From Pecten maximus (Eukaryota), in the NCBI RefSeq assembly GCF_902652985.1, contig NC_047027.1, positions 37,138,001 through 37,202,000 of the forward strand: a stretch of 64,000 bases of DNA, in the 5' to 3' direction. Within the stretch, counting starts at the first letter, position 1. The number at the start of each line of letters is the position of its first letter. Positions 23,801 through 54,956 of the stretch are shown piece after piece. The position numbers were made by a program, and so were the translations under genes. Under the pieces are notes generated by a model. That model saw only the letters and a program-made list of their open reading frames with translations. It was not told the DNA's origin and made no database searches.

Positions 23801-26800
23801 TTATTGAGAAGAAGTTGTTTAAAGATTTTAGCCTTTTTGACCCCTGTGACCTTGAATGAAGGTCAAGGTCATTCATTTGAACAAACTTGGTAGCCCTTCA
23901 CCCCAGCATGCTACAGACCCAATATCAAGTCCCTGGGTCTTTTGGCTATTTAGAAGAAGTCGTCTAATTTTTTTTTAGCATATTTGACTCCTGTGACCTT
24001 GAATGAAAGTCAAGGTCATTCATTTGAACAAACTTGGTAGCCCTTTACCCCAGCATGCTACAGACCCAATATCAACTCCCTGGGACTCTTGGTTATTGAG
24101 AAGAAGTTGTTTAAAGATTTTAGCCTTTTTGACCCCTGTGACCTTGAATGAAGGTCAACGTTATTCATTTGAACAAACTTGGTAGCCCTTCACCCCAGCA
24201 TGCTACAGGCCCAATATTAGGTCTCTAGGCCTTTTGGTTATTGAGAAGAAGTTGCTTGAATGGAAAGTTGACGCCGGACGGCCGGACGGACGACGGACGA
24301 CGGACGCCGCGCCACGGCATAAGCTCACTTGCCCTTCGGGCAGGTGAGCTAAAAACTGGTCAGCTGCTTTACTTCAAAGCCTATGAGTGTATGCCTTATA
24401 ATAGACATAGGAAGAGACTGGAGGGTGCAATGGGATTTCATAAAAGTAGTGAAATTAGAAATTATTTTTTCAGGATTTCAATATTGTTGTTAGACCCTGA
24501 TAAGCCAAATTTGAACAACTGGGCCCTGTTGCTCAACACAGAATAACCGTGGTTAAAAGAATCCTTTACCTGTAAAAATGACCCTACCAGACTTTGTATA
24601 CTTTTTGTACCTGAGTAGATCCTAACCCTACCAGACTTTGTATAATTTTGTACCTGAGTAGATCCTAACCCTACCAGACGTTGTATAATTTTGTACCTGA
24701 GTAGATCCTAACCCTACCAGACTTTCTATACTTTTTGTACCTGAGTAGATCCTAACCCTACCACAGACTTTCTATACTTTTTGTACCTGAGTAGATCCTA
24801 ACACTACCAGACTTTCTATACTTTTGTACCTGAGTAGATCCTGACCCTACCAGACTTTCTATACTTTTGTACCTGAGTAGATCCTAACCCTACCAGACTT
24901 TCTATACTTTTGTACCTGAGTAGATCCTAACCCTACCAGACTTTCTATACTTTTGTACCTGAGTAGATCCTAACACTACCAGACTTTCTATACTTTTTGT
25001 ACCTGAGTAGATCCTAACCCTACCACAGACTTTGTATAATTTTGTACCTGAGTAGATCCTAACCCTACCACAGACTTTTTATACTTTTTGTACCTGAGTA
25101 GATCCTAACCCTACCACAGACTTTGTATACTTTTGTACCTGAGTAGATCCTAACCCTACCACAGAGTTTCTATACTTTTTGTACCTGAGTAGATCATAAC
25201 CCTACCACAGACTTTGTATACTTTTGTACCTGAGTAGATCCTAACCCTACCACAGACTTTGTATACTTTTGTACTTGAGTAGATCCTAACCCTACCAGAC
25301 TTTCTATACTTTTGTACCTGAGTAGATCCTAACCCTACCACAGACTTTCTATACTTTTTGTACCTGAGTAGATCCTAACCCTACCAGACTTTCTATACTT
25401 TTTGTACCTGAGTAGATCCTAACCCTACCAGACTTTCTATACTTTTTGTACCTGAGTAGATCCTAACCCTACCAGACTTTCTATACTTTTTGTACCCGAG
25501 TAGATCCTAACCCTACCACAGACTTTGTATACTTTTGTACCTGAGTAGATCCTAACCCGACCAGACTTTCTATACTTTTTGTACCTGAGTAGATCCTAAC
25601 CCTAACAGACTTTCTATACTTTTTGTACCCGAGTAGATCCTAACCCTACCAGACTTTCTATACTTTTGTACTTGAGTAGATCCTAACCCTAACAGACTTT
25701 CTATACTTTTGTACCTGAGTAGATCCTAACCCTACCACAGACTTTGTATAATTTTTGTACCTGAGTAGATCCTAACCCTACCAGACTTTCTATACTTTTT
25801 GTACCTGAGTAGATCCTAACCCTACCAGACTTTCTATACTTTTTGTACCTGAGTAGATCCTAACCCTACCAGACTTTCTATACTTTTTGTACCTGAGTAG
25901 ATCCTAACCCTACCAGACTTTCTATACTTTTGTACCTGAGTAGATCCTAACCCTAACACAGACTTTCTATACTTTTTGTACCCGAGTAGATCCTCACCCT
26001 AACACAGACTTTCTATACTTTTTGTACCTGAGTAGATCCTCACCCTACCACACTTTCTATACTTTTGTACCTGAGTAGATCCTAACCCTACCACAGACTT
26101 TCTATACTTTTTGTACCTGAGTAGATCCTAACCCTACCACAGACTTTGTATACTTTTGTACCTGAGTAGATCCTAACCCTACCAGACTTTGTATAATTTT
26201 GTACCTGAGTAGATCCTAACCCTACCAGACTTTCTATACTTTTTGTACCTGAGTAGATCCTAACCCTACCACAGACTTTCTATACTTTTTGTACCTGAGT
26301 AGATCCTAACCCTACCAGACTTTCTATACTTTTTGTACCTGAGTAGATCCTAACCCTACCAGACTTTCTATACTTTTTGTACCTGAGTAGATCCTAACCC
26401 TACCACAGACTTTCTATACTTTTTGTACCTGAGTAGATCCTAACCCTACCAGACTTTCTATACTTTTGTACCGGAGTAGATCCTAACCCTACCAGACTTT
26501 CTATACTTTTTGTACCTGAGTAGATCCTAACCCTACCAGACTTTCTATACTTTTTGTACCTGAGTAGATCCTAACCCTACCAGACTTTCTATACTTTTGT
26601 ACCTGAGTAGATCCTAACCCTAACACAGACTTTCTATACTTTTTGTACCCGAGTAGATCCTCACCCTAACACAGACTTTCTATACTTTTTGTACCTGAGT
26701 AGATCCTCACCCTACCACACTTTCTATACTTTTGTACCTGAGTAGATCCTAACCCTACCACAGACTTTCTATACTTTTTGTACCTGAGTAGATCCTAACC

Positions 26801-29800
26801 CTACCACAGACTTTGTATACTTTTGTACCTGAGTAGATCCTAACCCTACCAGACTTTGTATAATTTTGTACCTGAGTAGATCCTAACCCTACCAGACTTT
26901 CTATACTTTTTGTACCTGAGTAGATCCTAACCCTACCACAGACTTTCTATACTTTTTGTACCTGAGTAGATCCTAACCCTACCAGACTTTCTATACTTTT
27001 TGTACCTGAGTAGATCCTAACCCTACCAGACTTTCTATACTTTTTGTACCTGAGTAGATCCTAACCCTACCACAGACTTTCTATACTTTTTGTACCTGAG
27101 TAGATCCTAACCCTACCAGACTTTCTATACTTTTGTACCGGAGTAGATCCTAACCCTACCAGACTTTCTATACTTTTTGTACCTGAGTAGATCCTAACCC
27201 TACCACAGACTTTCTATACTTTTGTACCCGAGTAGATCCTAACCCTACCAGACTTTCTATACTTTTTGTACCTAAGTAGATCCTGACCCTACCACAGACT
27301 TTCTATACTTTTTGTACCTGAGTAGATCCTAACCCTACCAGACTTTCTATACTTTTGTACCTGAGTAGATCCTAACACTACCAGACTTTCTATACTTTTT
27401 GTACCTGAGTAGATCCTAACCCTACCACAGACTTTCTATACTTTTTGTACCTGAGTAGATCCTGTATAGAGATTCCTCAAAGTCGCGCGAGATTCGACCA
27501 CAGTCAAGCCCCGGTAATGACATTGCTAATAACGATTCTGCACTTTTGGCACCACGTAGACGTCGCCGCTTCCAGTTGTGAACATCTTCCTCTGTGATGG
27601 CTTTCCTATCTTCACTCAGACCAAGTGGCTCTGGAATGATGTCATATTAATGGTAAATAAAATGTTTAATGTATTGAGTTATAATATTAATGGTCATTAA
27701 AGTGTGTTGAATGGTAATATTATTGGTCAATAAAGTGTATAATGTATTGAATGGTAATATTGACTGGCGCCTTTCTATTTATCTGTCACCCAGATTGCAT
27801 TTATATTGACAATAAATACAATCTGACAAGCGTTTAATTGTTGATTATAAAGTTTTCTGCACTTAACGAGTTAACTATTATGACTGTCATGCATACATGT
27901 ATTATCACAGTTCAGAAATAGCTAGAGAGTCATCTGTTGTAACACACTTGCACTAAATGCAGTATTTGTATATTAAACATGTAGACATACCAACTGATCA
28001 AGGCACAAATCTATTATAATCTGTGTATGTACTAATATTTTACCAAGTTTATGAGACAAATTATTTCAATTATGGACAAAAGTAGTCATTGACGTCACAT
28101 TTCCATTTAAAAGTTACTTACCACCTATGCTGTTTTTACGTCCCTTCTGTTTGATGCTGCCCTGCCGTGGCCCACGAGAGAAGATTGAGCGCCAACCACT
28201 CGGTGATTTCTTTGACTTGCCATAGCCTACAGTGTTACTTCCACTGACCAGCGTTTTCTTTCTGTATAGGATAAAACAGAGCCTGAAATCATGTTAGGTA
28301 CAGCATGTGGGCTTTGTCCCTCACAATGTACATAGCTGGGGTGAGAGTTCGGTTTATTTTGTTTGGTTTGTTTAACGTCCTACTAACAGCCATGGTCATT
28401 TAAGGACGTGGCAGGTTTTGGAGATGGAGGAAAGCCTGAGTACCCGGAGAAAAACCACCGGCATACAGTCAGTACCTGGCGACTGCCCCACATAGGTTTC
28501 GAACTCGCAACCCAGAGGTGGAGGGCTAGTGATAAAGTGTCGGTACACCTTAACCACTCGGCCACCACGGCCCCTGCTTGAGTGAGAGGTTGTTGGGATA
28601 ATGCAATTTAGTGGTTGGTGGTTAAATGGCATGGTAATAACATAATAGCCTTACATCTGTATAATGTTGTGTACATCATGTTGGCTTTTGTCCCCCACAA
28701 TGTACATAGCTGGGGTGAGAGGCAGTTGGGATAATTCTGTTTAGTGGTTGGTGGTCAAGTGGTGTAGATGTAACACACTTGACTTTCATCAGGGAGCACT
28801 TTCATCTGGGTCAACTAGACCGATTAAAATATCGAGGATATTGAATGATTTCAAGTTGCATATAACATACATTTCAACAGTATGACAGAATATCGATATA
28901 ACATACATTTCAAGAGTATGACAGAATATCGATATATTCTTTCATCACAATTTAGGCATTTTCTACTGTTATCTGCAGAGAATCTGTGCATGAATAGCTA
29001 ACTTCAAGTGAGTATTTTGTCAAACCTAGTCTGCATATTTCAGAAATACAGCAAAATGGCCCATCTATCTCTCAAAACTTTATTTTCAATGTAAAACTTA
29101 TATTTTCACTGCAAAATCTTATAAAATTCTCTCATCGCTGCAGTGAAGATATAAGTTTGATAAGTTTGATAAGTTTGCTAAATTTCACAGGCAAAAATGC
29201 AATAAAAGGTGATGTAACTGATTTCCCAATTGTTGTAAAACACATAAGGTTTGATATCCATTGTAGTGGCTGGATAGTGGGATAATCAAGTTAGTGGTGG
29301 TTTGATAGTTGGATTAGTGGGTTTTCTAGATTCAACAACAGTTTAGCCATTAAGTGTAGCCATTCTTAATCCAGTCATCAATCGCCTTATGCAGCTTCTA
29401 TTCTAGGTTTATACTTTTCAGATAGAACAACCCTATGCTCCAATGTAGAGGTAACTCTGATATATGAACCCAGTCAACTTGGTAAGCTTTTTTAGGTTAT
29501 TTCCCTTGAAGATATTCAATTTAAAACCTTCCTAAATCTTTCAAACTTGCATTCTGCTAATGTCTTTATATTACCAAGCTTGTAAATTGTACTGCCAGAA
29601 TCTTTATGTCAAATATTTTTTACAGAAGACCCTGAAATATACCTTTCTTATTCAGAAACGGGTTATTTTAGTGCCAAGATTTACTCTTATTTGAATAATG
29701 ATGGTATGCAAGTACCTATAGCCTGGCAAATCTATGACGGTATGGTAGCGAGATGGAAGGCGTTCTGGTCCCCCTCCGACATCTATATACTTCTGTGGCG

Positions 29801-32800
29801 GTGGGCGTAGACTAGCGGACAGGGCACGCTCCCTTGCCTCCTCCAGTGTAATTAGTTTAGTCGGTGTAGATATTGCTAGTGACTTTGGACGAGGTTTCCT
29901 CTGGGCACCTACAACACAATGGCATCAGTTTAAGACAAAGACAAAAAACAAACTTTTACATGAGGGAGTACTAAGAACATTTTACACACTTTTATACAAG
30001 GTACAACAATGTACATGTACTTGGTTCAAATTATTTGTTTTTCATATCTGTCGGGACTGGAATCGATCAATGTCAGAAATCTGGCTCTCCAAATATGCGA
30101 AAATAATGAACTCATTCCTGGGTTGCTATTCAAATAGTTATTGTAGAAACAACCAGATCTGATTCTTTTATGTTGCACATGGATCGGAATTTTTTTTGCA
30201 CAAGCTGTGTAATTCAACAAGATTAACAAAGTCTTGTCTAGCTTTCCTCTGTAATTTACAGTTGATATAATATTTGATGAATCAGCTAAATATCTGTGTT
30301 TAAACTCTTCAGATGCTAAATAAATCCCTAAATCTAGGTTTTAATGATGTAATCAGTAATCTTGATATTTTTCATTTCCAGCCAAAAATGATCCTTCTAT
30401 ATGCTGTACCAAAGGTATACTCACTTTTGAGTTCGGGTGATGAGTAAGATGGCATCTTATCACTGAAGATAAGATCAGCATAGAGTATCAGACACTCTGT
30501 GACCACAGCTTGTATCCCCACCCCCTGGAGAGCTGCAGCTCCACCCCCAGTCTCCAGCTCTTTCGACCGGAGAAGATTTGGTGCCCACACAATGGCCAGG
30601 TTCTTGGAATGCATACCGGTGTCAGGGCCATAGGCAGCCACTTTGGCTAGATGTCGCATGAGGTATTCTAAAGTTCTGGAAAATGAAATGTGTATACAAA
30701 TACAGTGAAAAATTTTCCAAACTGACATTCAATAGGATGGGAAATGCTGTGTAATCTGACATCAAGTGTCATTAAAACCTGTCTAATATGAAACCTTGAT
30801 AGATTGTAAGAGAAACCCTCCAATTAGACACCCTTTTGGATCTGTATTATATACTATTGTATGGGATCTGAATTGAATCCTATCTGAAACAAATTTAGCA
30901 GATCTGTACTTTCTAATGAGGGGGAAGCAACCTGTCCTACCTGTAATGAGGGGGAGGTAACTCATAATACTAATGAGGGGGGATAACTCATCATACCTGT
31001 AATGAGGGGGAGGTAACTCATAATACTAATGAGGGGGGATAACTCATCATACCTGTAATGAGGGGGAGGTAACTGCTGCACAACATCGTGAATCTTCCAC
31101 AGTTTATTGTCTTCATCTCGCACTGCATCCTGTCAACAATTCAAATAGATATCCGTGGATATATTTATAAGTCCAAATCACACAATTTAAAAATTCAAAA
31201 AGAAGCAATTGTAGAAGATATCCTATTAGGCTTTTACTTATGGGAACAGTTGTTTAAACTATCTTACATCAAAGAATTTTTCTGATTCAAAAATGAAAAG
31301 ATATGGCAACCCTATTTTGGGATGTGTGTCTCCTAATATGCAAATCAAATCATTCTGTAAGACAATCATACATACAGCAAATTTGTTGTAAAGTTGATAG
31401 GTAAGGAGAGGGTTGGGAAGCTCACGGAAGTACATCTTAAGTAAGGAGCTGATACTGTGGATGTCCTGTAGATAAACGTCGGTCGTCAGATCTGGAACGC
31501 GGTCTTCATCGAAGGCCAATCTAACCACAATAAAGAATTGTAACCAACATTGGCCGAACAACAACAAATATAATCCAAAATCTGGAAATATAGTACACAA
31601 CAAAGGTCGTCCATGTGTTGACGATATAATATTGGGACCGATATCTATCAGGGGTATATGCTATAAGTTCGAGATTTTGTGTGTACATGTACAACAAGGG
31701 CAGATAACTCATACACGTAACGCAAGGTAAATATCCCTATAGATTTGCACAGGGCTGTATTGCTTTTATTTCATTTCTCTTTTTATTTACAACTCTCTAA
31801 ATATCATATTAAGCAAGATATTAAAACCTACAAAGAAGGGAGATTACTCCTGTGACAACTGAAGATACCAGGTTACTGGCTGAACTCACCGGAGTTTCTG
31901 TATATTGGAGGTGATCCCTGACAGCCTGTAGATGCCATCCACAATGCCATGTTCCTCTATTACTTCTGAACAACACTTTAACACCAGGGGTACTGTAACA
32001 GAATATCACAGCGATTCTATGGATCTCTATACAGTAAAACATGTTTAGTATGAACACGTTTATAGCGATTTTATAGATATTGCGAACTGATCCCGATTCC
32101 CCAGCTATTCTCCCTCTTACTTCTATGTAATTCTGTAATTATATTGCGAATTTCACATAGCAAAATATTGTCTATAACGAACCAATTTAGCGGTCCCGTC
32201 GGCTGAAGTACGGCTATTCAATCGGTGAGTTATATTTTCGATGACTTCTGAATAAAGTGAGTTGTTTTGTCGATGTTTATGTCAAGTTGTTAATCCATTC
32301 TTCGAAGTCTAATTAGTGTGTACACAGTACAATGGCTTTATCATCAAGCGATTGAGAGCTAGTGAAAACGAGACTTCCGGGGTAAAGGTCACTGCGACCG
32401 ATTTTGTCAGTATTGATGCAGATGTTGTAAAAGACATTAAGAACGTGTTGGACAGTGAAGACGAGGAGAAAATAGAGACAGGGGACTAACAATCCGTAAT
32501 CAGTGGCGCTACGGCGAGTGATTATTTACACGAGATAAGCCATTTTCTGGAGTCCCAAAATGATATGTCAGATGTTTTTAGTACTTTGTACACACTTGCC
32601 TCACACAAAAAGTTTCGGCAGAAAATTATAACGGACTTAAAATAATTGAATCGCTTTTAATTTCTACTTGCTTGTAATTTTATTTTAATATTTTCATACA
32701 GCGAAGTTTTTAGGAAAAAACAATAAAATTTGTAATACACGTAATACGAACTATCAATATAACGAACTGATTCAGTTGGTCCCCTGGGATTCGTTATAAC

Positions 32801-35800: not shown

Positions 35801-38800
35801 CCTCCCCCTCCCCTGTCAGCCTCCTCCCCCTCCCTTTGTCAGCCTCCTCTCCCTCCCTTTGTCAGCCTCCTCCCCTTCCTTTTGTCAGCCTCCTCCCCCT
35901 CCCTTTGTCAGCCTCCTCCCCCTCCCTTTGTCAGCCTCCTCCCCCTCCCTTTGTCAGCCTCCTCCCCCTCCCTTTGTCAGCCTCCTCCCCCTTCCTTTTG
36001 TCAGCCTCCTTCCCCTTCCTTTTGTCAGCCTCCTCCCCCTCCCCTGTCAGCCTCCTCACCCTCACTTTCTCAGCCTCCTCCCCCTTCCTTTTGTCAGCCT
36101 CCTCCCCCTTCCTTTTGTCAGCCTCCTTCCCCTCCCCTGTCACCCTCCACACCCTCCCCGGTCAGCCTATTCCCCCTCCTCTCTGTCAGTCTCCACACCC
36201 TCCCCGGTCAGCCTATTCCCCCTCCTCTCTGTCAGTCTCCTCCCCCTCCCTTTGTTAGCCTCCTCCCCCTCCCTCTGTCAGCCTCATCCCCACCCCCCTG
36301 TCAGCCTCCTCACCCTCCCCTGTCAGCCTCCTTTTTTATAATAGTGTTTGACTGTGAGTGTTAGATACACACACATGCACTTACATGGTTTCTTACTTGC
36401 GTTAGGATCTGGTATTCGACTCTCAACTGATGCAGGAACTTTGTCTCCGATCACCTCCACGCACTCGCTCGGGAAAAACCCAACCTGTATTGAAAATAAA
36501 ACAATACTGTGGAAAACTGGAAACAAAAGAAAATTAACAAACGTCTAATTACAAGTCCTAATTTTTACATGTGAAAATCAACATGTTTCTTCCCTTACTA
36601 CCGAGTAATTTTTCATGATTTTTCTGACAATATTGCTATATTTATACATTGAAATGCTGACAATCCAACCTTATTTAGTCCTAAGTAATGTCCTACATGT
36701 GACAGACATGAGCAAACGGAACTTTTCTTTACATAGATCAATATTAAAGCTGATGAATGGTCCATCAATATCCACCTGCTGATGATAGTAACATCATAAA
36801 AGGAAAATAAGAATTTCACTTTTTTCAAATGTTTCATTGTTAGGGCTGTTCCTGGAAAACATATGGGACAGGGGGGAGGCATTTTGAAATTAGGGGACCT
36901 ACCTATAGGAGCGATTTAAAATTTTGATGAGCCTCCCACATATTTGTTTTTTTGTAAACATAGAAGCAATTTTAATGTAAAAATGGTACAAACACATCAC
37001 GTACACCCAACAACAGAAGAAATTTATTTCAAACACCACCAACCTATAGATGTGATTTTAATTTGAATTTTAATTTATAAAAGTGCCTTTCCATCCCCCC
37101 TCCTCTTTTCCTGGAACTGCCCTTAGCATTTCATTTCCTTTTCATGTCCTTTGCCAAGAATTCTTTTCACTTTGTAATAATGATAATAATTAGTCCTAAG
37201 ACATATTACCACTTTATATTTGAAAATTAAATTGACATAAATTTCTCAACTCTTCTCCAATGTTACCTCAAAACCTCTCTTGCCTCGCCACCAAATCGTC
37301 TCCTCCTGTTGGGGCATATCTATCACAGATACAATGTCTCCGACCTGTAAGAAACAGAGCAGCAAACCATTGTTCACGATTAACAGTAGATCTACAGAAA
37401 ATATTTAAACAGACACTTTCATTTTCCATCTACAAGTCAATATATTAAGGTTCTTTATTTTTTTTTTTTTTTTGTTAAATAGAAGAAAATTCAATAAATA
37501 TTTTGCTGTAAAAATATTTTTTATTGTTGATATTAAAACAGCTTTCTGTTCGCATCTTAGCTTGATTTTTAAGATAAAGTCAGAAATTTTATGAGATCAA
37601 GCTTACAGTTCTTGGATCAAATAAATCTTTCGAGGGCTATACCATGAATTCAGCAACAAACATGATAGCCGTTGTTATTTTAAGCCTATTGTATAAACGT
37701 TAATATTACGTTGTTATTTTCAGCCTATTGTATAAAATGTCATTACTTCTAGAGATATTTCGTCTGGGGCCTGGGCCGTATAGCGTTTGATTGCGTGAGC
37801 AGCAGCTATTGCGGGTGTGTTGATCCCTGAGTCATCCGTCGCCAGCAAGCGGTTGCCTCGATTGTCCAGCTGGAAAGAGATATAACACATCTGGAAAATG
37901 TCTAAATGACAATTAATCTCTAGCTTCTATGCAAAATAGAATTAACGATTGACAAAGGTACGGTATCTATGAGTTGTTAAAGTGACCTTGACCTTAACAC
38001 TGTAGTGTACTGGAGTTAAAACAGTAATGAACTGGAGTTAACACAGTAATGAACTGGAGTTAACACAGTAATGAACTGGAGTTAACACAGTAATGAACTG
38101 GAGTTAACACTGTAATGTACTGGAGTTAACACTGTAGTGTACTGGAGTTAACACAGTAATGAACTGGAGTTAACACCGCAGTATACTGAAGTTAACACTG
38201 TAATGAACTGGAGTTAACACAGGAATGAACTGGAGTTAACACAGTAATGAACTGGAGTTAACACTGTAATATACTGGAGTTAACTCTGTAGTGCACTTGA
38301 TCATGATAGTAACTGTGTTAACTCTAGTGTACTACTGTGTTAACTCCAATTCACCAGTGTTAACTTCAATACACTGCGGTGTTAACTCCAGTTCATTACT
38401 GTGTTAACTTCAGTTCATTACTGTGTTAACTCCAGTTCATTACAGTGTTAACTTCAGTATACTGCGGTGTTAACTTCAGTTCATTACTGTGTTAACTTCA
38501 GTTCATTACCGTGTTAACTGCAGTACACAACAGAGTGAACGCCTTGTATGATTTATAATATGAGACAGACAGACCTGCTACATTCAAGGAAACAAACTTA
38601 CTACAAAGCCTTATTGTAGATTTCATTTTAGTTCTGAGTCATGTTCAAATGTTCATGATCAAACTCACTTCAAACAAGTTGAATACCGAGCCACAATCAG
38701 ACTCACCTCAAAACAGCTGAGTACCGAGCCACAGTCAATCAAACTCACCTCAAACCAGTTGAGTACCGAGCCACAGTCAATCAAACTCACCTCAAACCAG

Positions 38801-41800
38801 TTGAGTACTGAGCCACAATCAAACTCGCCTCAAACCAGTTGAGTACCGAGCCACAATCAATCAAACTCACCTCAAACCAGTTGAGTACCGAGCCACAATC
38901 AAACTCGCCTCAAACCAGTTGAGTACCGAGCCACAATCAAACTCACCTCAAACCAGTTGAGTACCGAGCCACAGTCAATCAAACTCACCTCAAACCAGTT
39001 GAGTACCGAGCCAGTCAATCAAACTCACCTCAAACCAGTTGAGTACCGAGCCACAATCAAACTCACCTCAAACCAGTTGAGTACCGAGCCACAGTTAATC
39101 AAACTCACCTCAAACCAGTTTAGTACCGAGCCACAATCAAACTCGCCTCAAACCAGTTGAGTACCGAGCCACAGTCAAACTCGCCTCAAACCAGTTGAGT
39201 ACCGAGCCACAGTCAATCAAACTCACCTCAAACAAGTTGAGTACCGAGCCACAATCAAACTCACCTCAAACCAGTTGAGTACCGAGCCACAATCAAACTC
39301 ACCTCAAACCAGTTGAGTACCGAGCCACAGTTAATCAAACTCACCTCAAACGAGTTGAGTACCGAGCCACAGTTAATCAAACTCACCTCAAACCAGTTGA
39401 GTACTGAGCCAGTCAATCAAACTCACCTCAAACCAGTTGAGTACCGAGCCAGTCAATCAAACTCACCTCAAACCAGTTGAGTACCGAGCCAGTCAATCAA
39501 ACTCACCTCAAACCAGTTGAGTACCGAGCCACAGTCAATCAAACTCACCTCAAACGAGTTGAGTACCGAGCCACAGTTAATCAAACTCACCTCAAACCAG
39601 TTGAGTACTGAGCCAGTCAATCAAACTCACCTCAAACCAGTTGAGTACTGAGCCACAATCAAACTCACCTCAAACCAGCTGAGTACCGAGCCACAGTCAA
39701 TCAAACTCACCTCAAACCAGTTGAGTACCGAGCCAGTCAATCAAACTCACCTCAAACCAGTTGAGTACCGAGCCACAGTCAATCAAACTCACCTCAAACC
39801 AGTTGAGTACCGAGCCACAGTTAATCAAACTCACCTCAAACCAGCTGAGTACCGAGCCACAGTCAATCAAACTCACCTCAAACCAGTTGAGTACCGAGCC
39901 ACAGTTAATCATGCTGCCAGCGATGCGAGAAAATCTCTGTAAATATTGGGACAACATCTCCTCCATCTCCTGCAACACAAAAGGAATCAGGTCCAAGGGG
40001 TCACCACAGTTTAAACAATAGAGGTCAGAGGTCAACGCTTAGTGATAAGAAGTCAGCAGACACAGTTTAAGGTTAAAAGGCGAGGGATTTTTTTTACTTT
40101 TTCTTCTACATTTATGACATATCTTCAAAATTGGATCCACAAGCCACAATACTCAATTTTCTTACACTCTTTTCGTGTTAAGAAAGAAATCTTCAACGTT
40201 TTCAGACTAAAACTGGGCTTCATTATGACCTAGTTTTAGATATTATGATATTGACATTGTTAAATGGATAACAGATGAAGGGTACTGAGCTACTGGAGAG
40301 AGAACTGGGTTACTAGGTAGGGTGTTGGAGAATATTATGGGCTATTAATTTGATAATGTACTCTGTCATAAGGGTATTGAGTTATTAGGAAGAATAGTGG
40401 ATGACATTATTAGATGGAATCTCCCATACAGAGATATTTGGTTACGGACCTTATATGTTTTATTAGTGTCCTCTTCTTGGTTGAGATTTGGGAGACGACT
40501 GAACTTCCTGTCATAGATACAGCGGTGTAACTGTCTGTCCAGCATCTTAAAGTTTTTAAATGTTCTCCGTATAGTCCAGGACTTATCATTGGCCAGAGTC
40601 TTGACGAGAAATGTTCGTTCCATAACATCTGTTTCTCCATGGTGATGGTTCTCCTGGTCCTCGTCACACAGCGACACCTGGTGGACCGATTATCAACATA
40701 TTTCAGAAAAGTGATAATTTCCTCACTGATCTTTTTCCTTAATTCCAAATTGAACAAGTTGATATTCTCAAGTAAAAGAAAAAGACTTCAGCTTTGAACT
40801 AACATGTATGAGAATCAGCTTTGAACTAACATGTATGAGAATCAGATTTGAACTAACATGTATGAGAATCAGATTTGAACTACAGGGATCACCATGGCTT
40901 CAGATTTTACTATGGAGGAACCTGCGGGGACATTTTCCCAGCGCGCCGCAAGACCAATATTAATTAATTAAAGGGAGATAATTTGTTTACATGAGTTATG
41001 TCCCTTTTCATTTTTAGGGAGATGATTTATTGTACAGTAGTTATATCCCCTTAGAAATTGTTTTCAGAAATAATGATAAACTATTTTAATCATGGTAATA
41101 TAATTTATTTATTCAATATGTAAGAAAAATAAATACAGCATTTACCAATGTCTGACTCATCCATATTTGTACATCCTTAAATTAATACACTGCTCGTTCT
41201 TCATTCTCTTTACCAACTCAGACTTTCTCAAACTCATGGTCTCTCTCTATCTCTCTTTAAGATTACCAATTAAATGTTACTGATACACTTCCAAAGCTCA
41301 AGTTTCTTAAAATAATAAGCATTATGATATCACACTAAACACAATAACGATATGTAATGTCACAGCACTAATATAATATGATTTCCAATGTCACAATTGT
41401 CAGTCATTTTCACACACAAATTGTCCATTTTCTTACAGCCCAACTTCACACTTCATTGTCCTCAGGATCAAACAATGTGGCGATGGTGATATTTCTTTTT
41501 CTGATCTGTGTCCATAGATCTGCTGTCCTGTTTACAAAACATGCCTACAAATCAAATGAAACATTCAAAGTTAATAAAAATAATTTAATGAAATGTTTAA
41601 ACATGAAACTTTCACTCTAGGTAAATACTTGGACCTAATCACTGAAAATATTGAAAAAGAATTAATTTTAATTTTTGGTTTTGTGATTAGACAAAGTCAG
41701 TATATATTTAGTCACTAATGTGAAATTTGGAAATAATACATTTTTTTATCAAATATCAACTATTAAGTTTGCTTACATTAAATATGTATAGGCCTATAAA

Positions 41801-44800
41801 TCAGTCATATACAAACTAGCCAATAACATTTTTAAAAAATAATTTAAAAATTATATTTTTTATTATGACATGTAAGAGATTTATATTATACAAAATACAT
41901 TTTAGTAACCATTTGACACCTAAATAACCTACCTTCATCTTCGTGGTACTTTAGCCATAAATATTTCTTCATTCAGTCGGTAAAAATGACGATCTGTGTT
42001 TTGACTTGAACAAGTCCGGTGAACAGACCGGGCTATGCCTTCTGTCGTTTCGGCGAATTCTCGAAAAATGATTCAATAGACTGCTGCTTTAGTTGTCGCT
42101 TCATGATTACATCATGAAATTATAATCATCGGTCTTTTTGTTCTACAGTTCATGTTACTTTCGTTTTGCAAACTCCTCATTTCTTCACAAACATCCATGT
42201 CACGTGTGTTATAAAGTAATCGGGGTCATATATGCGTTTGACTTTAATTGTCGAAGCCATTTAAGCCTTTATTCGACACAGATCGACCGCTGTCAAAACA
42301 CAAACACGCGGTTCGTGGCCTGATCAATTAAGCCATCAATTAATATTGGTATGATTGATATCGGTTAATTCGTCGGGGTATTGGACGTCCAGGTCATTGA
42401 ATGAAGTGTCAAAAGTCGCCCTAGCGTGTGAACAGGTAATTAACCGGCCTCAAGCTCTTACCTGTGCAGTCAGTAAAACACTACACAGTCGGCGGTATCT
42501 GGGGCTCACCACGGGTTAACAGAGTTTTGAATACGAAGATCGGCGGGGCAGATTTTTTTTACTATGGCGCTACATGATTTTACTATGGCGGGTAGACATT
42601 TTACTATGGCGCTGCTCCATAGTAAAACAGCCCGTGGTGATCACTGAACTAACATGTATTTGAATCAGATTTGAACTAACATGTATGAGAATCAGCTTTG
42701 AACTAACATGTATGAGAATCAGCTTTGAACTAAAATGTATGAGAATCAGTTTTGAACTAACATGTACGAGAATCAGCTTTGAACTAACATGTATGAGAAT
42801 CAGCTTTGAACTAACATGTATGAGAATCAGATTTGAACTAACATGTATGAGAATCAGCTTTGAACTAACATGTATGAGAATCAGCTTTGAACTAACATGT
42901 ATGAGAATCAGCTTTGAACTAACATGTATGAGAATCAGATTTGAACTAACATGTATGAGAATCAGATTTGAACTAACATGTATGAGAATCAGCTTTGAAC
43001 TAACATGTATGAGAATCAGATTTGAACTAACATGTATGAGAATCAGATTTGAACTAACATGTATGAGAATCAGCTTTGAACTAACATGTATGAGAATCAG
43101 ATTTGAACTAACATGTATGAGAATCAGATTTGAACTAACATGTATGAGAATCAGCTTTGAACTAACATGTATGAGAATCAGCTTTGAACTAACATGTATG
43201 AGAATCAGATTTGAACTAACATGTTTTTTTTTTGTTTTGTTTTTTTTACAAAATCTGCCATTTCTGAAATGGTACTCATATTAATTGACTTGTTTTCTAA
43301 ATTTCTGAAATTTTAAACTGGACGTCATAGACTCATTAGTGTTTTCCGTGCCTATATCACAAAGAGTGCAAAACGAACGTGTTCCCAATGTATTTTAGAC
43401 TTATTTTCCTCATCAAGGGATTAAAAATTACCAATTGTGTCCATAAATCTAGAAGTGACATGTACACTACATCATTAAACTGGTATTAAGCATGATATTC
43501 ATGAAACAATTATCAGCTTGCAAATTTTAAACATAATTAACATTTTCCTAATTCAGTCGTTTGGATTTCCCCAAAATACCTAGGAAAACCATGGCATAAC
43601 ACTGCCTTATCAATGACAACTTATTACCTGTATTTTATGGAGTTCCACAAAGTCATAGTGGAAGTGAGCACATTCTTGCAGCTTGGGAAAACGTGTCGAG
43701 CCATCTAGCATGCTGTAACAGAATCATTTATAGAGTATAGATATAGGAATAACAGTCCACAAAGACAATTTCTAACACAATATATAAGATATACATTTAA
43801 AAAAAAAAAATTTATGAAATATATTTCAGTGATTACAATGTTAACCATCATGGTTATTAGCATGCAAATAATAATGGCTACAGAAAATTAATATTTGTTG
43901 ATCGTCAGGTGTAAAGTTATGAAAAACTAAACTGTTATCAATTTGTAACAAGGTCTAAAGTCTGAAGTTCCATGCCGACATTCTGTAAAATCTCACTAAA
44001 GACTTCACAACGAACATCTATTTACAAGCTACCTGTTATTGAAGACTTCACAACAAAGATTTATTGACAAGCTACCTGTTATTGAAGACTTCACAACAAA
44101 GATTTATTGACAAGCTACCTGTTATTGAAGACTTCACAACAAAGATTTATTGACAAGCTACCTGTTATTGAAGACTTCACAATGAACATTTATTTACCAG
44201 CTACCACACTACAACAACTGAACACATACAGGTAAAGCTGAGGTGCTCAGTTAAGTGGTTGTGAGGTAAGCTGAGGTGCTAAGTTAAGTGGTTGTTAAGT
44301 GGTTGTGAGGCGTACCTCGACACACGTCGGATGCGGATAGTTGAGGTGGAGGCTGTACTGCTTCGCTGAGAACCGAGGCTGCTGTTATCAGAATCGTACA
44401 TCTGTAACACTCCACCATGCTGCTGTAACAGATATCAGTGATTGGTTACAATTTACATCAGACAATGCCAAACATATTTTTCTGTCATATTCACGCCAGA
44501 TTTTCGTAATAGTCATGTAATGATATTTCAGGATTTAACCAATTTCAAACAATAAATAAAACAATTCCCAAAACAATCTTGTTATTTTGTATCTTAAATA
44601 AAAGATATAAGAAAGACATTTCATTTCTAAATCATGGCTTTTCTGTAGAGAAATATCCCCATTGTAGTTACCTTGGTATAATACTGGGTACCTGTCCCCT
44701 CTGACCGTATGGTGGCTGTACTAGACTTTCTGTAGAGAAATATCCCCATTATAGTTACCTTGGTATAATACTGGGTACCTGTCCCCTCTGACCGTATGGT

Positions 44801-45897
44801 GGCTGTACTAGACTTTCTGTAGAGAAATATCCCCATTATAGTTACCTTGGTATAATACTGGGTACATGTCCCCTCTGACCGTATGGTGGCTGTACTAGAC
44901 TTTCTGTAGAGAAATATCCCCATTATAGTTACCTTGGTATAATACTGGGTACCCGTCCACTCTGACCGTATGGTGGCTGTACTAGACTTTCTGTAGAGAA
45001 ATATCCCCATTATAGTTACCTTGGTATAATACTGGGTACATGTCCCCTCTGACCGTATGGTGGCTGTACTAGACTTTCTGTAGAGAAATATCCCCATTAT
45101 AGTTACCTTGGTATAATACTGGGTACCCGTCCCCACTGACCGTATGGTGGCTGTACTAGACTTTCTGTAGAGAAATATCCCCATTATAGTTACCTTGGTA
45201 TAATACTGGGTACCCGTCCCCTCTGACCGTATGGTGGCTGTACTAGACTTTCTGTAGAGAAATATCCCCATTATAGTTACCTTGGTATAATACTGGGTAC
45301 CCGTCCCCACTGACCGTATGGTGGCTGTACTAGACTTTCTGTAGAGAAATATCCCCATTATAGTTACCTTGGTATAATACTGGGTACCTGTCCCCTCTGA
45401 CCGTATGGTGGCTGTACTAGACTTTCTGTAGAGAAATATCCCCATTATAGTTACCTTGGTATAATACTGGGTACATGTCCCCTCTGACCGTATGGTGGCT
45501 GTACTAGACTTTCTGTAGAGAAATATCCCCATTATAGTTACCTTGGTATAATACTGGGTACCCGTCCACTCTGACCGTATGGTGGCTGTACTAGACTTTC
45601 TGTAGAGAAATATCCCCATTATAGTTACCTTGGTATAATACTGGGTACCTGTCCCACTCTGACCGTATGGTGGCTGTACTAGACTTTCTGTAGAGAAATA
45701 TCCCCATTATAGTTACCTTGGTATAATACTGGGTACCCGTCCCGTCTGACCGTATGGTGGCTGTACTAGACTTTCTGTAGAGAAATATCCCCATTATAGT
45801 TACCTTGGTATAATACTGGGTACCTGTGCCCTCTGACCGTATGGTGGCTGTACTAGACTTTCTGTAGGGTTCATCTTCTTCGTCTACCCTTACATTT
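15443..45897 (-). CDS. ARHGAP32: Rho GTPase-activating protein 32/33-like (PX-RICS/CdGAPr family), spliced CDS of 18 exons, ~2,580 aa plus an alternative N-terminus
   Basis: Manual exon chain with GT-AG borders and matching phases throughout. Family motifs: FPKLQECAHFHY, NCGSVLNWFELDNRGN, SH3 (AHAIKRYTAQAPDEISLEVGDIVSVID..WWRGKRGFEVGFFPSECVE), VFGCDLGEHL, DGIYRLSG, KMYFRELPNPLLTYQLY, NLAIVWAPNLLRS, KLITLEEAR. Confidence 0.92.
20995..21499. mobile_element. MITE with 4x tandem amplification (~60 bp) of its left end
   Basis: gctgttccaggaaa ... tttcctggaacagccctaa; related inverted copy at 36840-37124. Confidence 0.65.
21800..22269. mobile_element. MITE
   Basis: TIR gtggttcgtacaga ... tctgtacgaaccac; subterminal ttcaagca(c)tttt repeats. 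Confidence 0.65.
22292..22453 (-). CDS. ARHGAP32: ARHGAP32-like exon (DDESKHPSIRHKRSLSS...SGTSS)
   Basis: tttacag| ... G|gtaggt, 162 nt, phase 1-1, open frame. Confidence 0.8.
23101..24355. mobile_element. Helentron-type non-autonomous element (HINE/CvA-like) carrying ~7 x 145-bp internal repeats
   Basis: Start ttaacaag-gggcccaatgggccc-gctcacctg; 145-bp tandem units; (ggac)n microsatellite; terminal hairpin agctcacttgccc-ttc-gggcaggtgagct followed by aaaaa. Confidence 0.8.
24581..27463 (-). repeat. 43-46-bp tandem array (~65 copies) spanning the exon/intron junction at 27451
   Basis: Unit gtacaaaaagtatagaaagtctg(tg)gtagggttAGGATCTACTCAG. Confidence 0.95.
27451..27630 (-). CDS. ARHGAP32: ARHGAP32-like exon (EPLGLSEDRK...RLRGAKSAESL...LYRIYS)
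   Basis: cattccag| ... CAG|gtacaa, 180 nt, phase 1-1; LRxAKSxESL family motif. Confidence 0.85.
28122..28261 (-). CDS. ARHGAP32: ARHGAP32-like exon (KKTLVSGS...KKSPSGWRSIFS...NSIG)
   Basis: tatacag| ... G|gtaagt, 140 nt, phase 2-1; KKSP.GWRS.F family motif. Confidence 0.88.
28350..28574 (-). mobile_element. tRNA-derived SINE (intronic)
   Basis: Full-length copy of the same family. Confidence 0.9.
29716..29908 (-). CDS. ARHGAP32: ARHGAP32-like exon (AQRKPRPKSLAISTPTKLITLEEARER...YHTVIDLPGY)
   Basis: gttgtag| ... AG|gtactt, 193 nt, phase 1-2; RPKSL / LEEA / YIDVGGGP / YHTVIDLP motifs. Confidence 0.9.
30425..30675 (-). CDS. ARHGAP32: ARHGAP32-like exon, RhoGAP C-terminal part (TLEYLMRHL...NLAIVWAPNLLRS...)
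   Basis: ttttccag| ... A|gtgagt, 251 nt, phase 2-1. Confidence 0.93.
30912..31075 (-). repeat. 56-bp tandem repeat (3 copies) spanning the exon/intron junction at 31053
   Basis: GTTACCTCCCCCTCATTACAG|gta ends at 31053, 30997 and 30941. Confidence 0.9.
31053..31129 (-). CDS. ARHGAP32: ARHGAP32-like exon, RhoGAP (DAVRDEDNKLWKIHDVVQQLPPPHYR)
   Basis: ttgacag| ... CAG|gtatga, 77 nt, phase 0-2; HDV.QQLPPPHYR motif. Confidence 0.92.
31376..31520 (-). CDS. ARHGAP32: ARHGAP32-like exon, RhoGAP (LAFDEDRVPDL...KMYFRELPNPLLTYQLYNKFA)
   Basis: ggttag| ... GCT|gtatgt, 145 nt, phase 2-0. Confidence 0.93.
31890..31992 (-). CDS. ARHGAP32: ARHGAP32-like exon, RhoGAP with catalytic arginine finger (VPLVLKCCSEVIEEHGIVDGIYRLSGITSNIQKLR)
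   Basis: gttacag| ... CG|gtgagt, 103 nt, phase 1-2; GIYRLSG intact. Confidence 0.93.
32032..32812 (+). mobile_element. pogo/Tigger-type (Tc1/mariner) non-autonomous DNA transposon
   Basis: TA|CAGTAAAACATGTTTA ... TATAACCGTGTTTTACTG|TA; internal degenerate DFVSIDADVVKDIKNVLDSEDEE ... RQKIITD, like Tigger C-termini. Confidence 0.75.
33180..33610. repeat. 18-bp minisatellite
   Basis: (acaaataagcccctgtcc)n. Confidence 0.95.
33690..33851 (-). CDS. ARHGAP32: ARHGAP32-like exon (VRKHGKFLSFLR...KERVFGCDLGEHLLNTGQENTTD)
   Basis: atggtag| ... G|gtgagt, 162 nt, phase 1-1. Confidence 0.9.
34468..35510. repeat. ~33-36-bp minisatellite
   Basis: (aaacagttatacac(ac)atgtgttatgtaggtgggt)n. Confidence 0.95.
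35655..36332. repeat. C-rich ~21-25-bp minisatellite
   Basis: (tgtcagcctcctccccctccc)n with variants. Confidence 0.95.
36385..36484 (-). CDS. ARHGAP32: ARHGAP32-like exon, SH3 end (VGFFPSECVEVIGDKVP...KKP)
   Basis: atacag| ... T|gtaagt, 100 nt, phase 0-1. Confidence 0.92.
36840..37124. mobile_element. MITE related to 21190-21499, opposite orientation
   Basis: ttagggctgttcctggaaaa ... ttttcctggaactgccctta; shared internal segments. Confidence 0.65.
37267..37344 (-). CDS. ARHGAP32: ARHGAP32-like exon, SH3 (VGDIVSVIDMPQQEETIWWRGKRGFE)
   Basis: cttacag| ... GAG|gtaaca, 78 nt, phase 0-0. Confidence 0.93.
37747..37869 (-). CDS. ARHGAP32: ARHGAP32-like exon (LDNRGNRLLATDDSGINTPAIAAAHAIKRYTAQAPDEISLE)
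   Basis: ctttccag| ... GAA|gtaatg, 123 nt, phase 0-0. Confidence 0.93.
37995..38530. repeat. 22-bp minisatellite arranged as two inverted arms
   Basis: (gttaacacagtaatgaactgga)n to ~38295, then its reverse complement from ~38312. Confidence 0.9.
38655..39910 (-). repeat. 38-42-bp tandem array (~30 copies) spanning the exon/intron junction at 39877
   Basis: Unit gtgagtttgattgactgtggctcggtactcaactggtttgag. Confidence 0.95.
39877..39969 (-). CDS. ARHGAP32: ARHGAP32-like exon, PX-like end (EMEEMLSQYLQRFSRIAGSMINCGSVLNWFE)
   Basis: gttgcag| ... GAG|gtgagt, 93 nt, phase 0-0. Confidence 0.9.
40450..40677 (-). CDS. ARHGAP32: ARHGAP32-like exon, PX-like (VSLCDED...KSWTIRRTFKNFKMLDRQLHRCIYDRKFSRL...TYK)
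   Basis: ccaccag| ... AAG|gtccgt, 228 nt, phase 0-0. Confidence 0.9.
40787..43223. repeat. 27-bp satellite split by the hAT-like element
   Basis: gagaatcag(c/a)tttgaactaacatgtat at 40787-40882 and 42647-43223. Confidence 0.95.
40883..42646 (-). mobile_element. internally deleted hAT-like DNA transposon inserted in a 27-bp satellite
   Basis: Imperfect TIRs CAG(G/T)GATCACCA(T/C)GG..TTTTACTATGGAG; aacta duplicated at 40878-40882 and 42647-42651; remnants MKRQLKQQSIESFF, KKYLWLKYHEDE|GMFCK (TTF-type zinc finger-like). Confidence 0.75.
43628..43712 (-). CDS. ARHGAP32: ARHGAP32-like exon (MLDGSTRFPKLQECAHFHYDFVELHKIQ)
   Basis: gttacag| ... CAG|gtaata, 85 nt, phase 2-0; FPKL.ECAHFHY family motif. 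Confidence 0.92.
43998..44205. repeat. 43-bp tandem repeat (~4.5 copies)
   Basis: gaagacttcacaacaaagatttattgacaagctacctgttatt. Confidence 0.9.
44316..44422 (-). CDS. ARHGAP32: ARHGAP32-like exon (QHGGVLQMYDSDNSSLGSQRSSTASTSTIRIRRVS)
   Basis: gttacag|CAG (NAGNAG acceptor) ... AG|gtacgc, 107 nt, phase 0-2, fits both neighbours. Confidence 0.8.
44630..45866 (-). repeat. 87-bp tandem array (14 copies) spanning the exon/intron junction at 45804
   Basis: Unit gtaactataatggggatatttctctacag + AAAGTCTAGTACAGCCACCATACGGTCAGAGGGGACAGGTACCCAGTATTATACCAAG; donors at 45804, 45717, 45629, 45542 ... 44672. Confidence 0.95.
45804..45897 (-). CDS. ARHGAP32: ARHGAP32-like first common exon (NVRVDEEDEPYRKSSTATIRSEGTGTQYYTK)
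   Basis: ttaacag| ... AAG|gtaact, 94 nt, phase 2-0, in frame with the next exon. Confidence 0.75.
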
Positions 45898-46909: not shown

Positions 46910-47000
46910 TTAACCCTTTCACCCCTACTGACCATAATGGACTTCAACTTATGAAAGAATGGCAGATTCCACTAAAGTTTCTTAGGGTTGAAAGGGTTAA
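46910..47000. mobile_element. piggyBac-like mini-MITE (83 bp between TTAA sites)
   Basis: TTAA|CCCTTTCACCCCTA ... TAGGGTTGAAAGGG|TTAA. Confidence 0.6.
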
Positions 47001-49142: not shown

Positions 49143-49243
49143 CTCAGGTCAATCAAGGTCATCCTCCTTGGCCGGATACATGGCCTCTTTCTGGGAATCT
49201 GCGGCGTGCCATAGATATTCTGTACCTCAAAGGATTCCATCAT
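49143..49243 (-). CDS. candidate alternative first coding exon (MMESFEVQNIYGTPQIPRKRPCIRPRRMTLIDL)
   Basis: ATG at 49243, open frame to AG|gtaacc in phase 2, matching the 45897 acceptor; GC-richer island. Confidence 0.55.
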
Positions 49244-54737: not shown

Positions 54738-54956
54738 TTTGGTTTGGTTTGTTTTTGTTTAACATCCTATTAACAGCCAGGGTCATTTAGGGACGTGCCA
54801 GGTTTTGGAGGTGGAGGAAAGCCGGGGTACCCGGAGAAAAACCACCGGCCTACGGTCAGTACCTGGCAACTGCCCCACGTAGGTTTCGAACTCGCAACCC
54901 AGAGGTGGAGGGCTAGTGATAAAGTGTCGGGACACCACTCTGCCACCGCGGCCCCC
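54738..54956 (-). mobile_element. tRNA-derived SINE
   Basis: Same family; small deletion in the head. Confidence 0.9.

What the first reader, a model, noticed from the sequence alone, without database searches (positions are those of the whole stretch)
24581..45897. Splice-donor-anchored tandem arrays: four introns of one gene start with amplified copies of their own exon/intron junction
Seen: at four separate exons (ends 45804, 39877, 31053, 27451) the repeat unit is the exon 3' end plus the first intron bases, amplified 14x, ~30x, 3x and ~65x. The units are unrelated in sequence and length (87, ~42, 56, ~44 bp). In every case the exon-proximal copy is the real junction, the array extends only into the intron, and the junction reads AG|GT. 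Four of 17 introns affected, all at the donor and none at an acceptor, suggests more than random satellite placement. Inference: either a process that duplicates DNA at 5' splice sites (transcription/splicing-coupled R-loops, or microhomology slippage/rolling-circle copying), or selection tolerates only this geometry because the exon stays intact. The result is large banks of decoy, alternative or recursive donors. It also matches the known tandem-duplication (AG|GT proto-splice) model of intron gain.
Basis: partly seen in the sequence, partly recalled or inferred. Interest (0 to 1): 0.9.

Follow-up and report, generated by a model that had tools for sequence, protein, structure and literature searches.

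The report
Splice-junction minisatellites in a scallop gene
Four introns of a king-scallop RhoGAP gene begin with tandem copies of their own exon end plus splice donor; this repeat type is already known ("mirage" minisatellites), but it is unusually common in this repeat-rich genome and moderately favours donors.

Summary
The window is Pecten maximus DNA. The gene is the ARHGAP32-like LOC117341471, on the minus strand.

At exon ends 45804, 39877, 31053 and 27451, the exon tail (64, 35, 22 and 13 nt) plus the first 23, 7, 34 and about 31 intron bases is repeated 14, 31, 3 and 66 times. The repeats run into the intron only. No other donor and no acceptor of the gene has junction copies. The arrays exist nowhere else in the 918-Mb assembly.

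- The kind is known: amphioxus "mirages" and the human F7 IVS7 repeat.
- The arrays grew by ordinary minisatellite turnover. One 667-bp block of 15 units is duplicated at 100% identity.
- Donor exclusivity fails. In 85 independent exons of this genome I found 3-6 donor-anchored and 2-4 acceptor-anchored arrays.
- A real but moderate donor excess remains. Triple strong-donor arrays give 20,693 matches genome-wide against 3,739 for the reversed motif. This gene has 4 donor arrays against 0.7-0.9 expected.
- The introns were not created by these duplications.

RNA use of the distal donors could not be tested. This scan has reported the same thing in at least 8 other windows of this genome.

The parts
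15446..49240 (-). Host gene: Pecten maximus LOC117341471, an ARHGAP32-like protein (PX, SH3 and RhoGAP domains, then a 1.8-kaa tail). It has 19 coding exons in the longest model.
   Evidence: P0001 is 100% identical to the last exon and carries NCBI's name; Pfam PX, SH3 and RhoGAP on single exons; exon mapping.
45804..45897 (-). Exon A, coding ..NVRVDEEDEPYRKSSTATIRSEGTGTQYYTK. It ends AAG|GTAACT. Its last 64 nt form the exon part of the 87-bp unit.
   Evidence: Mizuhopecten and NCBI isoforms X3/X4 read ..YYTK|QHGG..
44640..45867 (-). Array A1: 87 bp x14 (64 nt of exon plus 23 nt of intron). All 14 donors are intact. The unit length is a multiple of 3, but copy 3 is 88 bp. The array makes up 84% of the intron.
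   Evidence: unique in the genome.
44316..44422 (-). Exon B (QHGGVLQMYD..). Its acceptor TGTTACAG| is unique sequence about 217 nt beyond the array.
39877..39969 (-). Last PX-domain exon (..AGSMINCGSVLNWFE), ending GAG|GTGAGT. Its last 35 nt form the exon part of the 42-bp unit.
   Evidence: The residues are conserved in pectinid orthologues P0002 and P0003.
38658..39911 (-). Array A2: 38-42 bp x31 (35 nt of exon plus 7 nt of intron), with an 80-bp higher-order period. 26 of the 31 copies keep GT.
   Evidence: unique in the genome.
31053..31129 (-). RhoGAP-domain exon (..KIHDVVQQLPPPHYR), ending CAG|GTATGA. Its last 22 nt are in the unit.
30914..31074 (-). Array A3: 56 bp, with donors at exon end 31053 and at pseudo-copies 30997 and 30941. 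The 56-bp copies are 100% identical. The unit itself is built on an older 28-30 bp duplication.
27451..27630 (-). Exon (..GRISRDFEESLYRIYS), ending CAG|GTACAA. Its last 13 nt are in the unit.
24581..27463 (-). Array A4: 43-46 bp x66, with a 133-bp higher-order period. It makes up 57% of a 5-kb intron.
   Evidence: unique in the genome apart from one 69% match.
25781..27170 (-). Inside A4, a block of about 15 units duplicated at a shift of 667 bp with 100% identity. This is either recent unequal exchange or an assembly artefact.
   Evidence: unit-length pattern; autocorrelation; two 100% matches 667 bp apart.

Best explanation
These are four independent, locus-specific 'mirage'-type minisatellites.

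How each arose and grew. In each case one tandem duplication happened to span an exon/intron junction, taking in 13-64 nt of conserved coding sequence plus 7-34 nt of intron. The duplicate then expanded inside the intron by the usual minisatellite processes (replication slippage, unequal exchange). This genome is very rich in such arrays: about 19% of genic DNA is in them.

What the arrays do to the gene. The exon-proximal copy stays the working junction because it is the first 5' splice site after the exon. That is the rule shown experimentally for the human F7 IVS7 repeat. The downstream copies are therefore silent passengers, and the introns swell (37-84% of these four introns is array).

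Why donors might be favoured. Donor-side arrays may be tolerated better than acceptor-side ones. Deletions that would remove a junction-anchored array also cannot cross into the exon. Together these two effects could give a moderate donor excess without any splice-site-specific mutational process.

Shown here: anatomy, local origin, growth by block duplication, presence of acceptor-anchored arrays elsewhere, and a moderate genome-wide donor excess.

Inferred: silence of the pseudo-donors in this gene, and the reason for the donor excess.
For: - Real junctions.
- Conserved coding sequence inside the units (NCGSVLNWFE, QLPPPHYR, and the YRKSS..QYYTK tail, which is single-copy in Mizuhopecten and in P0002).
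- Arrays found only at this locus.
- Higher-order periods and a 100%-identical 667-bp block.
- Boundary copy not homogenised: the true exon has GGC where all 13 A1 pseudo-copies have GGG or TGG. The amphioxus paper describes the same exclusion of boundary copies.
- No extra decay of the donor core in the pseudo-copies.
- Array density: 18.8% of 289 kb around 85 unrelated exons.
- Independent sample: donor-anchored L063, L016 and L073, plus degenerate L019, L054 and the exon upstream in L062. Acceptor-anchored L079, L007 and L060..
- Conserved proximal-donor splice in NCBI isoforms X3/X4 and in orthologues.
- Literature: mirages span either boundary and do not disturb splicing (PMC3087553). In F7 IVS7 only the most upstream of identical donors is used (PMC1557585).
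Against: - The donor excess is larger than pure random seeding predicts. This gene has 4 against 0.7-0.9 expected.
- Genome-wide, triple AGGTRAGT arrays give 5.5x the matches of the reversed motif, and about 2.8x by array count on contig C1. About a quarter of all AGGTRAGT in the genome sits in such arrays.
- In the 85-exon sample, array starts within about 100 nt of donors are about 2x denser than deeper in the flank. Acceptors show no such excess.
- My tolerance/retention account of this excess is an inference, not a test.
- No RNA data could be laid.
- NCBI isoforms X1/X2 are modelled from the last A1 donor.
Confidence: 0.68

Rival explanations
1. 5' splice sites are mutational hot spots for tandem duplication in this genome. 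Possible causes are transcription- or splicing-coupled events such as R-loops, polymerase pausing at U1-bound sites, or template switching. On this reading arrays are born at donors more often than elsewhere.
For: - Nominal excess in this gene.
- 5.5x excess of strong-donor triple arrays over the reversed motif, although the single motifs are equally common outside arrays.
- About 2x denser array starts near donors but not near acceptors in 85 independent exons.
- Every strong-donor triple array in my 352-kb sample sits at a real donor.
Against: - Acceptor-anchored arrays occur at a similar order of frequency.
- Generic donor hexamers are not significantly enriched among array units.
- Growth is by internal block duplication, so at most the seeding step would be biased.
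- The match-level count is heavy-tailed and motif-dependent. One shuffled control was swamped by a microsatellite.
- The array-level ratio has a wide interval, about 1-7.
- No mechanism of this kind is documented in the papers I read.
Confidence: 0.17
2. The arrays are functional. They could be banks of alternative, decoy or recursive donors, or U1-binding sites, kept by selection. For the in-frame 87-bp and 42-bp arrays they could be a source of variable protein isoforms or alternative exons.
For: - 87 and 42 are multiples of 3.
- All 14 A1 donors and 26 of 31 A2 donors are intact.
- NCBI isoforms X1/X2 use the last A1 donor.
- Each A1 unit also carries a plausible 3' splice site (TTTCTCTACAG|), which would define a 58-nt pseudo-exon.
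- A4 ends in TTTTTACAG|GTAAAG.
Against: - Copy 3 of A1 is 88 bp, so the frame from the real exon breaks. X1/X2 therefore have to start at an ATG inside the array. That pattern fits short junction reads mapping equally to 14 identical donors, with the shortest intron chosen (inference).
- Variation among A1 copies is concentrated in a few codons and mostly changes the amino acid.
- The 56- and 44-bp units shift the frame, and A4 has an in-frame stop in the first unit.
- Orthologues have a single copy.
- No protein in the 5.8-billion-sequence set carries the repeat.
- Two of four unit lengths divisible by 3 is close to chance.
Confidence: 0.1
3. The arrays, or their copy numbers, are assembly artefacts of a repeat-rich long-read assembly.
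For: A 667-bp block inside A4 is duplicated at 100% identity. That is what a mis-joined repeat can look like.
Against: - There are four unrelated arrays, each in register with a real junction.
- Copies diverge by 3-9% and carry variants ordered in higher-order patterns.
- The same architecture is seen at unrelated loci and in other windows noted by this scan.
Confidence: 0.04

Closest known systems
'Mirage' minisatellites of amphioxus (Adh3, globin genes BflGb6 and BflGb9; Canestro et al. 2002, cited and extended in PMC3087553)
   Same: Tandem repeats whose unit spans an exon/intron boundary. Unit lengths run from tens to about 160 bp. The authentic copy is used in the mRNA. The copies carry AG/GT signals. 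The cluster-boundary copy is excluded from homogenisation.
   Different: - Here the host is a bivalve mollusc.
- Copy numbers reach 31 and 66, against a handful in amphioxus.
- There are four arrays in one gene.
- This genome shows a measurable donor bias.
- Somatic or allelic instability was not testable here.
Human F7 intron 7 37-bp VNTR (PMC1557585)
   Same: The first monomer contains the exon 7/IVS7 junction, so the authentic donor is followed by identical pseudo-donors. Only the most upstream donor is used. This is the best available mechanistic model for why such arrays are tolerated.
   Different: F7 has 5-9 copies at one locus. Splicing was tested experimentally there and not here. In F7, in-frame pseudo-sites were not used either.
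Intron gain by tandem duplication of an AGGT-containing exon segment (Rogers model; Hellsten et al. 2011, PMC3265369)
   Same: A tandem duplication places a second AG|GT downstream of the first (for the paper).
   Different: In that model the new intron is made of the duplicate and its acceptor comes from the copied AG. Here each intron has its own unique acceptor and unique distal sequence, and the exon after the acceptor does not continue the unit. These are old introns that were inflated, not new ones.
Human CBS 844ins68
   Same: A duplication of an intron/exon boundary that is spliced around, leaving a normal mRNA.
   Different: It is a single duplication at an acceptor, not an array.

Membership tests
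Mirage (splice-junction) minisatellite | Head-to-tail minisatellite array | tested here: met
   TRF; spacing of the donor anchors.
Mirage (splice-junction) minisatellite | The repeat unit spans a real exon/intron boundary, and the exon-side copy is the authentic junction | tested here: met
   Protein-to-genome mapping with P. maximus isoforms and two pectinid orthologues; junction probes.
Mirage (splice-junction) minisatellite | Normal splicing from the authentic site; the copies are not used | tested here: inconclusive
   NCBI isoforms X3/X4 and the orthologues show the proximal splice. X1/X2 are modelled from the last A1 donor.
Mirage (splice-junction) minisatellite | Minisatellite turnover: concerted evolution inside the array, with the boundary copy excluded | tested here: met
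   Higher-order periods and a 100%-identical 667-bp block. The real A1 exon copy differs from all 13 pseudo-copies at one site.
Mirage (splice-junction) minisatellite | Length polymorphism between alleles or in somatic tissue | not testable with these tools
Intron created by tandem duplication (AG|GT proto-splice model) | The intron consists of the duplicated segment, and its 3' splice site is the copied AG of AGGT | tested here: not met
   The acceptors at 44422, 37869, 30677 and 22452 are unique sequence outside the arrays. The downstream exons do not start with the unit's post-donor sequence.
Dispersed satellite or transposon-borne array inserted next to exons | The same unit is present at other loci | tested here: not met
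   Own-genome DNA searches return only the arrays themselves.
Recursive (ratchet) splice sites | A polypyrimidine tract plus AG immediately followed by GTAAGT-like sequence, used stepwise in long introns | tested here: inconclusive
   Most units lack a pyrimidine tract before AG|GT. A3 units (CCTCCCCCTCATTACAG|GT) and the distal end of A4 (TTTTTACAG|GTAAAG, near 24572) look the part. Use was not testable.

The most novel reading that the evidence does not exclude
In Pecten maximus, 5' splice sites are genuine hot spots for the birth or retention of minisatellites. The rate would be several-fold above neighbouring intron sequence and above acceptors. On this reading the genome holds on the order of a thousand arrays of three or more consensus donors, and about a quarter of all AGGTRAGT words lie in them. 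That would point to a splice-site-linked duplication or retention process. It would also make the genome a large natural experiment on how the spliceosome chooses among identical donors. In-frame cases such as the 87-bp array could feed new coding repeats or alternative exons.
Probability: 0.3. Interest if true: 0.7.

Novelty: new member of a known kind. Interest (0 to 1): 0.42.

Why it matters
For annotation. Arrays of identical donors mislead spliced aligners and gene predictors. Two of the four NCBI isoforms of this gene start inside the 87-bp array and translate 11 copies of it.

For splicing biology. A gene with 14, 31, 3 and 66 tandem copies of its own donors tests the 'first donor wins' rule well beyond the 5-9 copies studied in F7.

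For genome evolution. These arrays account for 37-84% of the four introns, so this is one concrete way in which scallop introns grow.

The moderate donor bias, if confirmed against the annotation, would need explaining. It could reflect a mutational bias, or differences in tolerance and retention.

Tried and rejected
RNA evidence
- All runs found were kept as assembled contigs, and most were only guessed to be RNA.

Orthologous introns
The age and conservation of the arrays stay untested.

Protein and paper searches
- A protein search with the 359-aa open frame of the 87-bp array found nothing.
- PDB searches with single short exons gave nothing or a frame error.
- The original 'mirage' paper (PMC117041) is not held. 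I cite it through PMC3087553.

Own-genome sampling
- The shuffled control motif GATGRTGA is invalid because it matches (GAT)n microsatellites.
- L068 looked donor-anchored by coordinates, but its array starts 28 nt into the intron.

Ideas considered and rejected
- Dispersed satellite or transposon origin.
- Intron gain by these duplications.
- Selection inactivating the pseudo-donors.
- Meaning in the AG|GT junctions: about half of the gene's other donors are AG|GT too.

Step left out
- I built and searched no joined (spliced) coding sequence. Exons were searched one by one by reference, and full-length comparisons used database proteins only.

Full report
WHAT THE WINDOW IS

The 1,823-codon open frame at 20914-15446 (minus strand) is 100% identical to Pecten maximus LOC117341471 isoform X2. 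It has full-length orthologues in Mizuhopecten yessoensis, another pectinid transcriptome, oysters and mussels, several of them named ARHGAP32. Single exons hit Pfam PX, SH3 and RhoGAP. The window is G000:C13:37138001-37202000 of a 918-Mb assembly.

Mapping the four NCBI isoforms and two orthologues onto the window gives 19 coding exons on the minus strand.

CHECKING THE OBSERVATION

TRF finds the four arrays at the stated places. The junctions read:
- AAG|GTAACT at 45804
- GAG|GTGAGT at 39877
- CAG|GTATGA at 31053
- CAG|GTACAA at 27451
.

Three of these exon ends lie in conserved coding sequence:
- ..NCGSVLNWFE| then LDNRGN..
- ..QLPPPHYR| then TLEYLMRHL..
- ..QYYTK| then QHGGVLQ.., which is single-copy in Mizuhopecten and in the other pectinid.

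So the arrays were copied from the exons, not the reverse.

The unit anatomy, by array:

| Array | Exon nt + intron nt | Donor copies |
|---|---|---|
| A1 | 64 + 23 | 14 |
| A2 | 35 + 7 | 31 |
| A3 | 22 + 34 | 3 |
| A4 | 13 + about 31 | 66 |

.

A 22-nt junction probe finds copies only downstream of these four donors. It finds none for the 12 other donors or the 13 acceptors tested. The units are unrelated to one another. Each array is unique to this locus in the whole assembly. That excludes a dispersed satellite or transposon origin.

HOW THE ARRAYS GREW

- A4 has a 133-bp and A2 an 80-bp higher-order period.
- The order of A4 unit lengths repeats over about 15 units. At a shift of 667 bp, roughly 700 bp are 100% identical.
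- In A1 the real exon copy carries GGC where all 13 pseudo-copies carry GGG or TGG. The boundary copy therefore stays outside homogenisation, as reported for amphioxus.
- The donor core of the pseudo-copies is no more decayed than the rest of the unit.

All this is ordinary minisatellite turnover. Only the seeding duplication has to span the junction.

The arrays make up 84, 61, 37 and 57% of their introns. The acceptors and distal intron parts are unique sequence. These are therefore old, formerly short introns that were inflated, not introns created by the duplication.

THE 87-BP ARRAY AND THE NCBI MODELS

Isoforms X3 and X4 splice 45804 to 44422, like the orthologues. Isoforms X1 and X2 start at an ATG inside the array (45619), translate 11 units and splice from the last donor copy (44672).

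Copy 3 is 88 bp long, which breaks the frame coming from the real exon. That explains the internal start.

Junction reads with 64 nt or less on the exon side fit all 14 donors equally well. I therefore take X1/X2 for a likely mapping artefact, but this is an inference.

IS IT MORE THAN CHANCE, AND IS IT DONOR-SPECIFIC?

(a) Within the gene. Nineteen arrays sit in 11 introns. If each had been seeded at random in the array-free part of its intron, 0.7-0.9 would span a donor and as many an acceptor. Four donor arrays give P = 0.003-0.009 nominally, in a window chosen for looking striking. Zero acceptor arrays is unremarkable.

(b) An independent sample. Own-genome Pfam searches (dynein PF03028, myosin PF00063, kinesin PF00225) gave 90 loci of one exon plus 1.5 kb on each side, 85 of them non-redundant.
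- 18.8% of these 289 kb is in arrays of period 10 or more.
- Clear donor-anchored arrays: L063 (70 bp), L016 (about 86 bp) and L073 (26 bp x29.5, CAGACAG|GTGAGT).
- Degenerate donor-anchored ones: L019, L054, and the exon upstream in L062, where the copies read GA instead of GT.
- Acceptor-anchored arrays also exist: L079 (..TTGTTAG|GGTCGG), L007 (41.5 bp x28, TTCCTAG|GTTGTGACCCTGCCG) and L060.
- About 1-2 per side are expected from the density of array starts (0.45-0.62 per kb) times the unit length.
- Array starts are about twice as dense within 100 nt of donors as deeper in the flank. Acceptors show no such excess.

(c) Genome-wide motif counts. The tool supplies its own control, the pattern read backwards.

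| Pattern | Matches | Reversed control | Ratio |
|---|---|---|---|
| Three AGGTRAGT, 20-50 nt apart | 20,693 | 3,739 | 5.5x |
| Single AGGTRAGT | 90,251 | 77,124 | 1.17x |
| Three TTTHCAGG (acceptor-like), 20-50 nt apart | 8,186 | 5,389 | 1.5x |

.
- About a quarter of all strong-donor words in the genome therefore lie in such arrays.
- Counting arrays rather than matches on contig C1 gives about 6 in 4.15 Mb against about 11-12 in 21.9 Mb. That is about 2.8x, with a wide interval of roughly 1-7.
- A shuffled control was spoiled by a microsatellite, which shows how heavy-tailed match counts are.
- In my 352-kb sample, every strong-donor triple array sits at a real donor.
- Generic donor hexamers are not significantly enriched among all array units.

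READING

The kind is known:
- 'Mirages' in amphioxus occur at either boundary, and splicing is undisturbed (PMC3087553).
- In the human F7 IVS7 37-bp repeat, identical pseudo-donors are functional but silent, because the most upstream site is chosen (PMC1557585).

This scan has already reported the same thing in at least eight other windows of this genome, with differing views on enrichment. My own tests put the donor excess at roughly 2-7x, depending on the measure. Acceptors are near background but not empty.

The simplest account has three parts:
- rampant local tandem duplication;
- tolerance of donor-side arrays, because the first donor wins;
- poorer tolerance of upstream cryptic acceptors, and slower loss of arrays that abut an exon.

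A splice-site-linked mutational bias is not excluded (about 0.17). Function of the copies is unlikely but untested (about 0.1).

LIMITS

- No RNA or raw-read evidence could be obtained.
- I made no joined spliced model. Exons were searched singly by reference.

Noticed in passing
window 44640-45867 (minus strand): Each 87-bp unit also carries a good 3' splice site (TTTCTCTACAG|A) 29 nt after its donor, so every unit defines a 58-nt pseudo-exon. Using one in place of the real 94-nt exon would keep the frame (a 36-nt difference). Adding one would shift the frame. No RNA evidence was obtainable.
   Followed up: partly
window 44672-45619 (minus strand): NCBI isoforms X1 and X2 (XP_033759218.1, XP_033759219.1) start at an ATG inside the array and translate 11 repeat units. 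This is probably an annotation artefact caused by 14 identical donors.
   Followed up: partly
window 37994-38284 and 38312-38524: Two 22-bp arrays lie directly after array A2 in the same intron and are reverse complements of each other. Together they form a long palindromic pair just upstream of the next exon.
   Followed up: no
window 42645-43224 and 40788-40882: The same 27-bp unit forms two separate arrays 1.8 kb apart in one intron, the second about 110 nt before the acceptor of the PX exon.
   Followed up: no
window 23233-24252; loci L010, L019, L054, L079, L007: The motif AAGGTCA/TGACCTT recurs in many unrelated arrays. It is in 11 of 143 array units against 3.3 +/- 1.6 in matched non-array DNA. 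The 145-bp satellite at 23233-24252 holds it as a palindrome.
   Followed up: partly
window 58963-59157, 54786-55058, 28399-28650, 11783-12037, 7073-7267: A dispersed element of about 200 bp, with an open frame reading ..[39 protein letters not shown].., occurs at least five times in the window on the minus-strand reading. It is probably a SINE- or MITE-like repeat.
   Followed up: no
window 5047-6783 and 7815-8359, flanking 7060-7899: Two arrays of the same 43-bp unit flank a 280-codon open frame that looks like the tail of a mobile element.
   Followed up: no
window 24560-24581 (minus strand): The last, variant copy of A4 reads TTTTTACAG|GTAAAG. This is a pyrimidine tract plus AG|GT, like a recursive splice site, 2.9 kb into a 5-kb intron.
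   Followed up: no
window 36383-36398 (minus strand): Two alternative donors about 12-15 nt apart (CAA|GTAAGA and CAT|GTAAGT) account for the 4-residue difference between NCBI isoforms X1 and X2.
   Followed up: partly
locus L062 about 460-1300: A 30-bp x27 array starts right after a kinesin exon and derives from its donor, but the copies read CAG|GA instead of CAG|GT. This would be a junction array whose pseudo-donors are dead.
   Followed up: partly
G000:C1:3361201-3371205: A satellite of about 10 kb with 57-bp units, each holding AAGGTCRAGGTGAGTGG. It dominates the first listed matches of the strong-donor pattern. It is unknown whether it abuts an exon.
   Followed up: no
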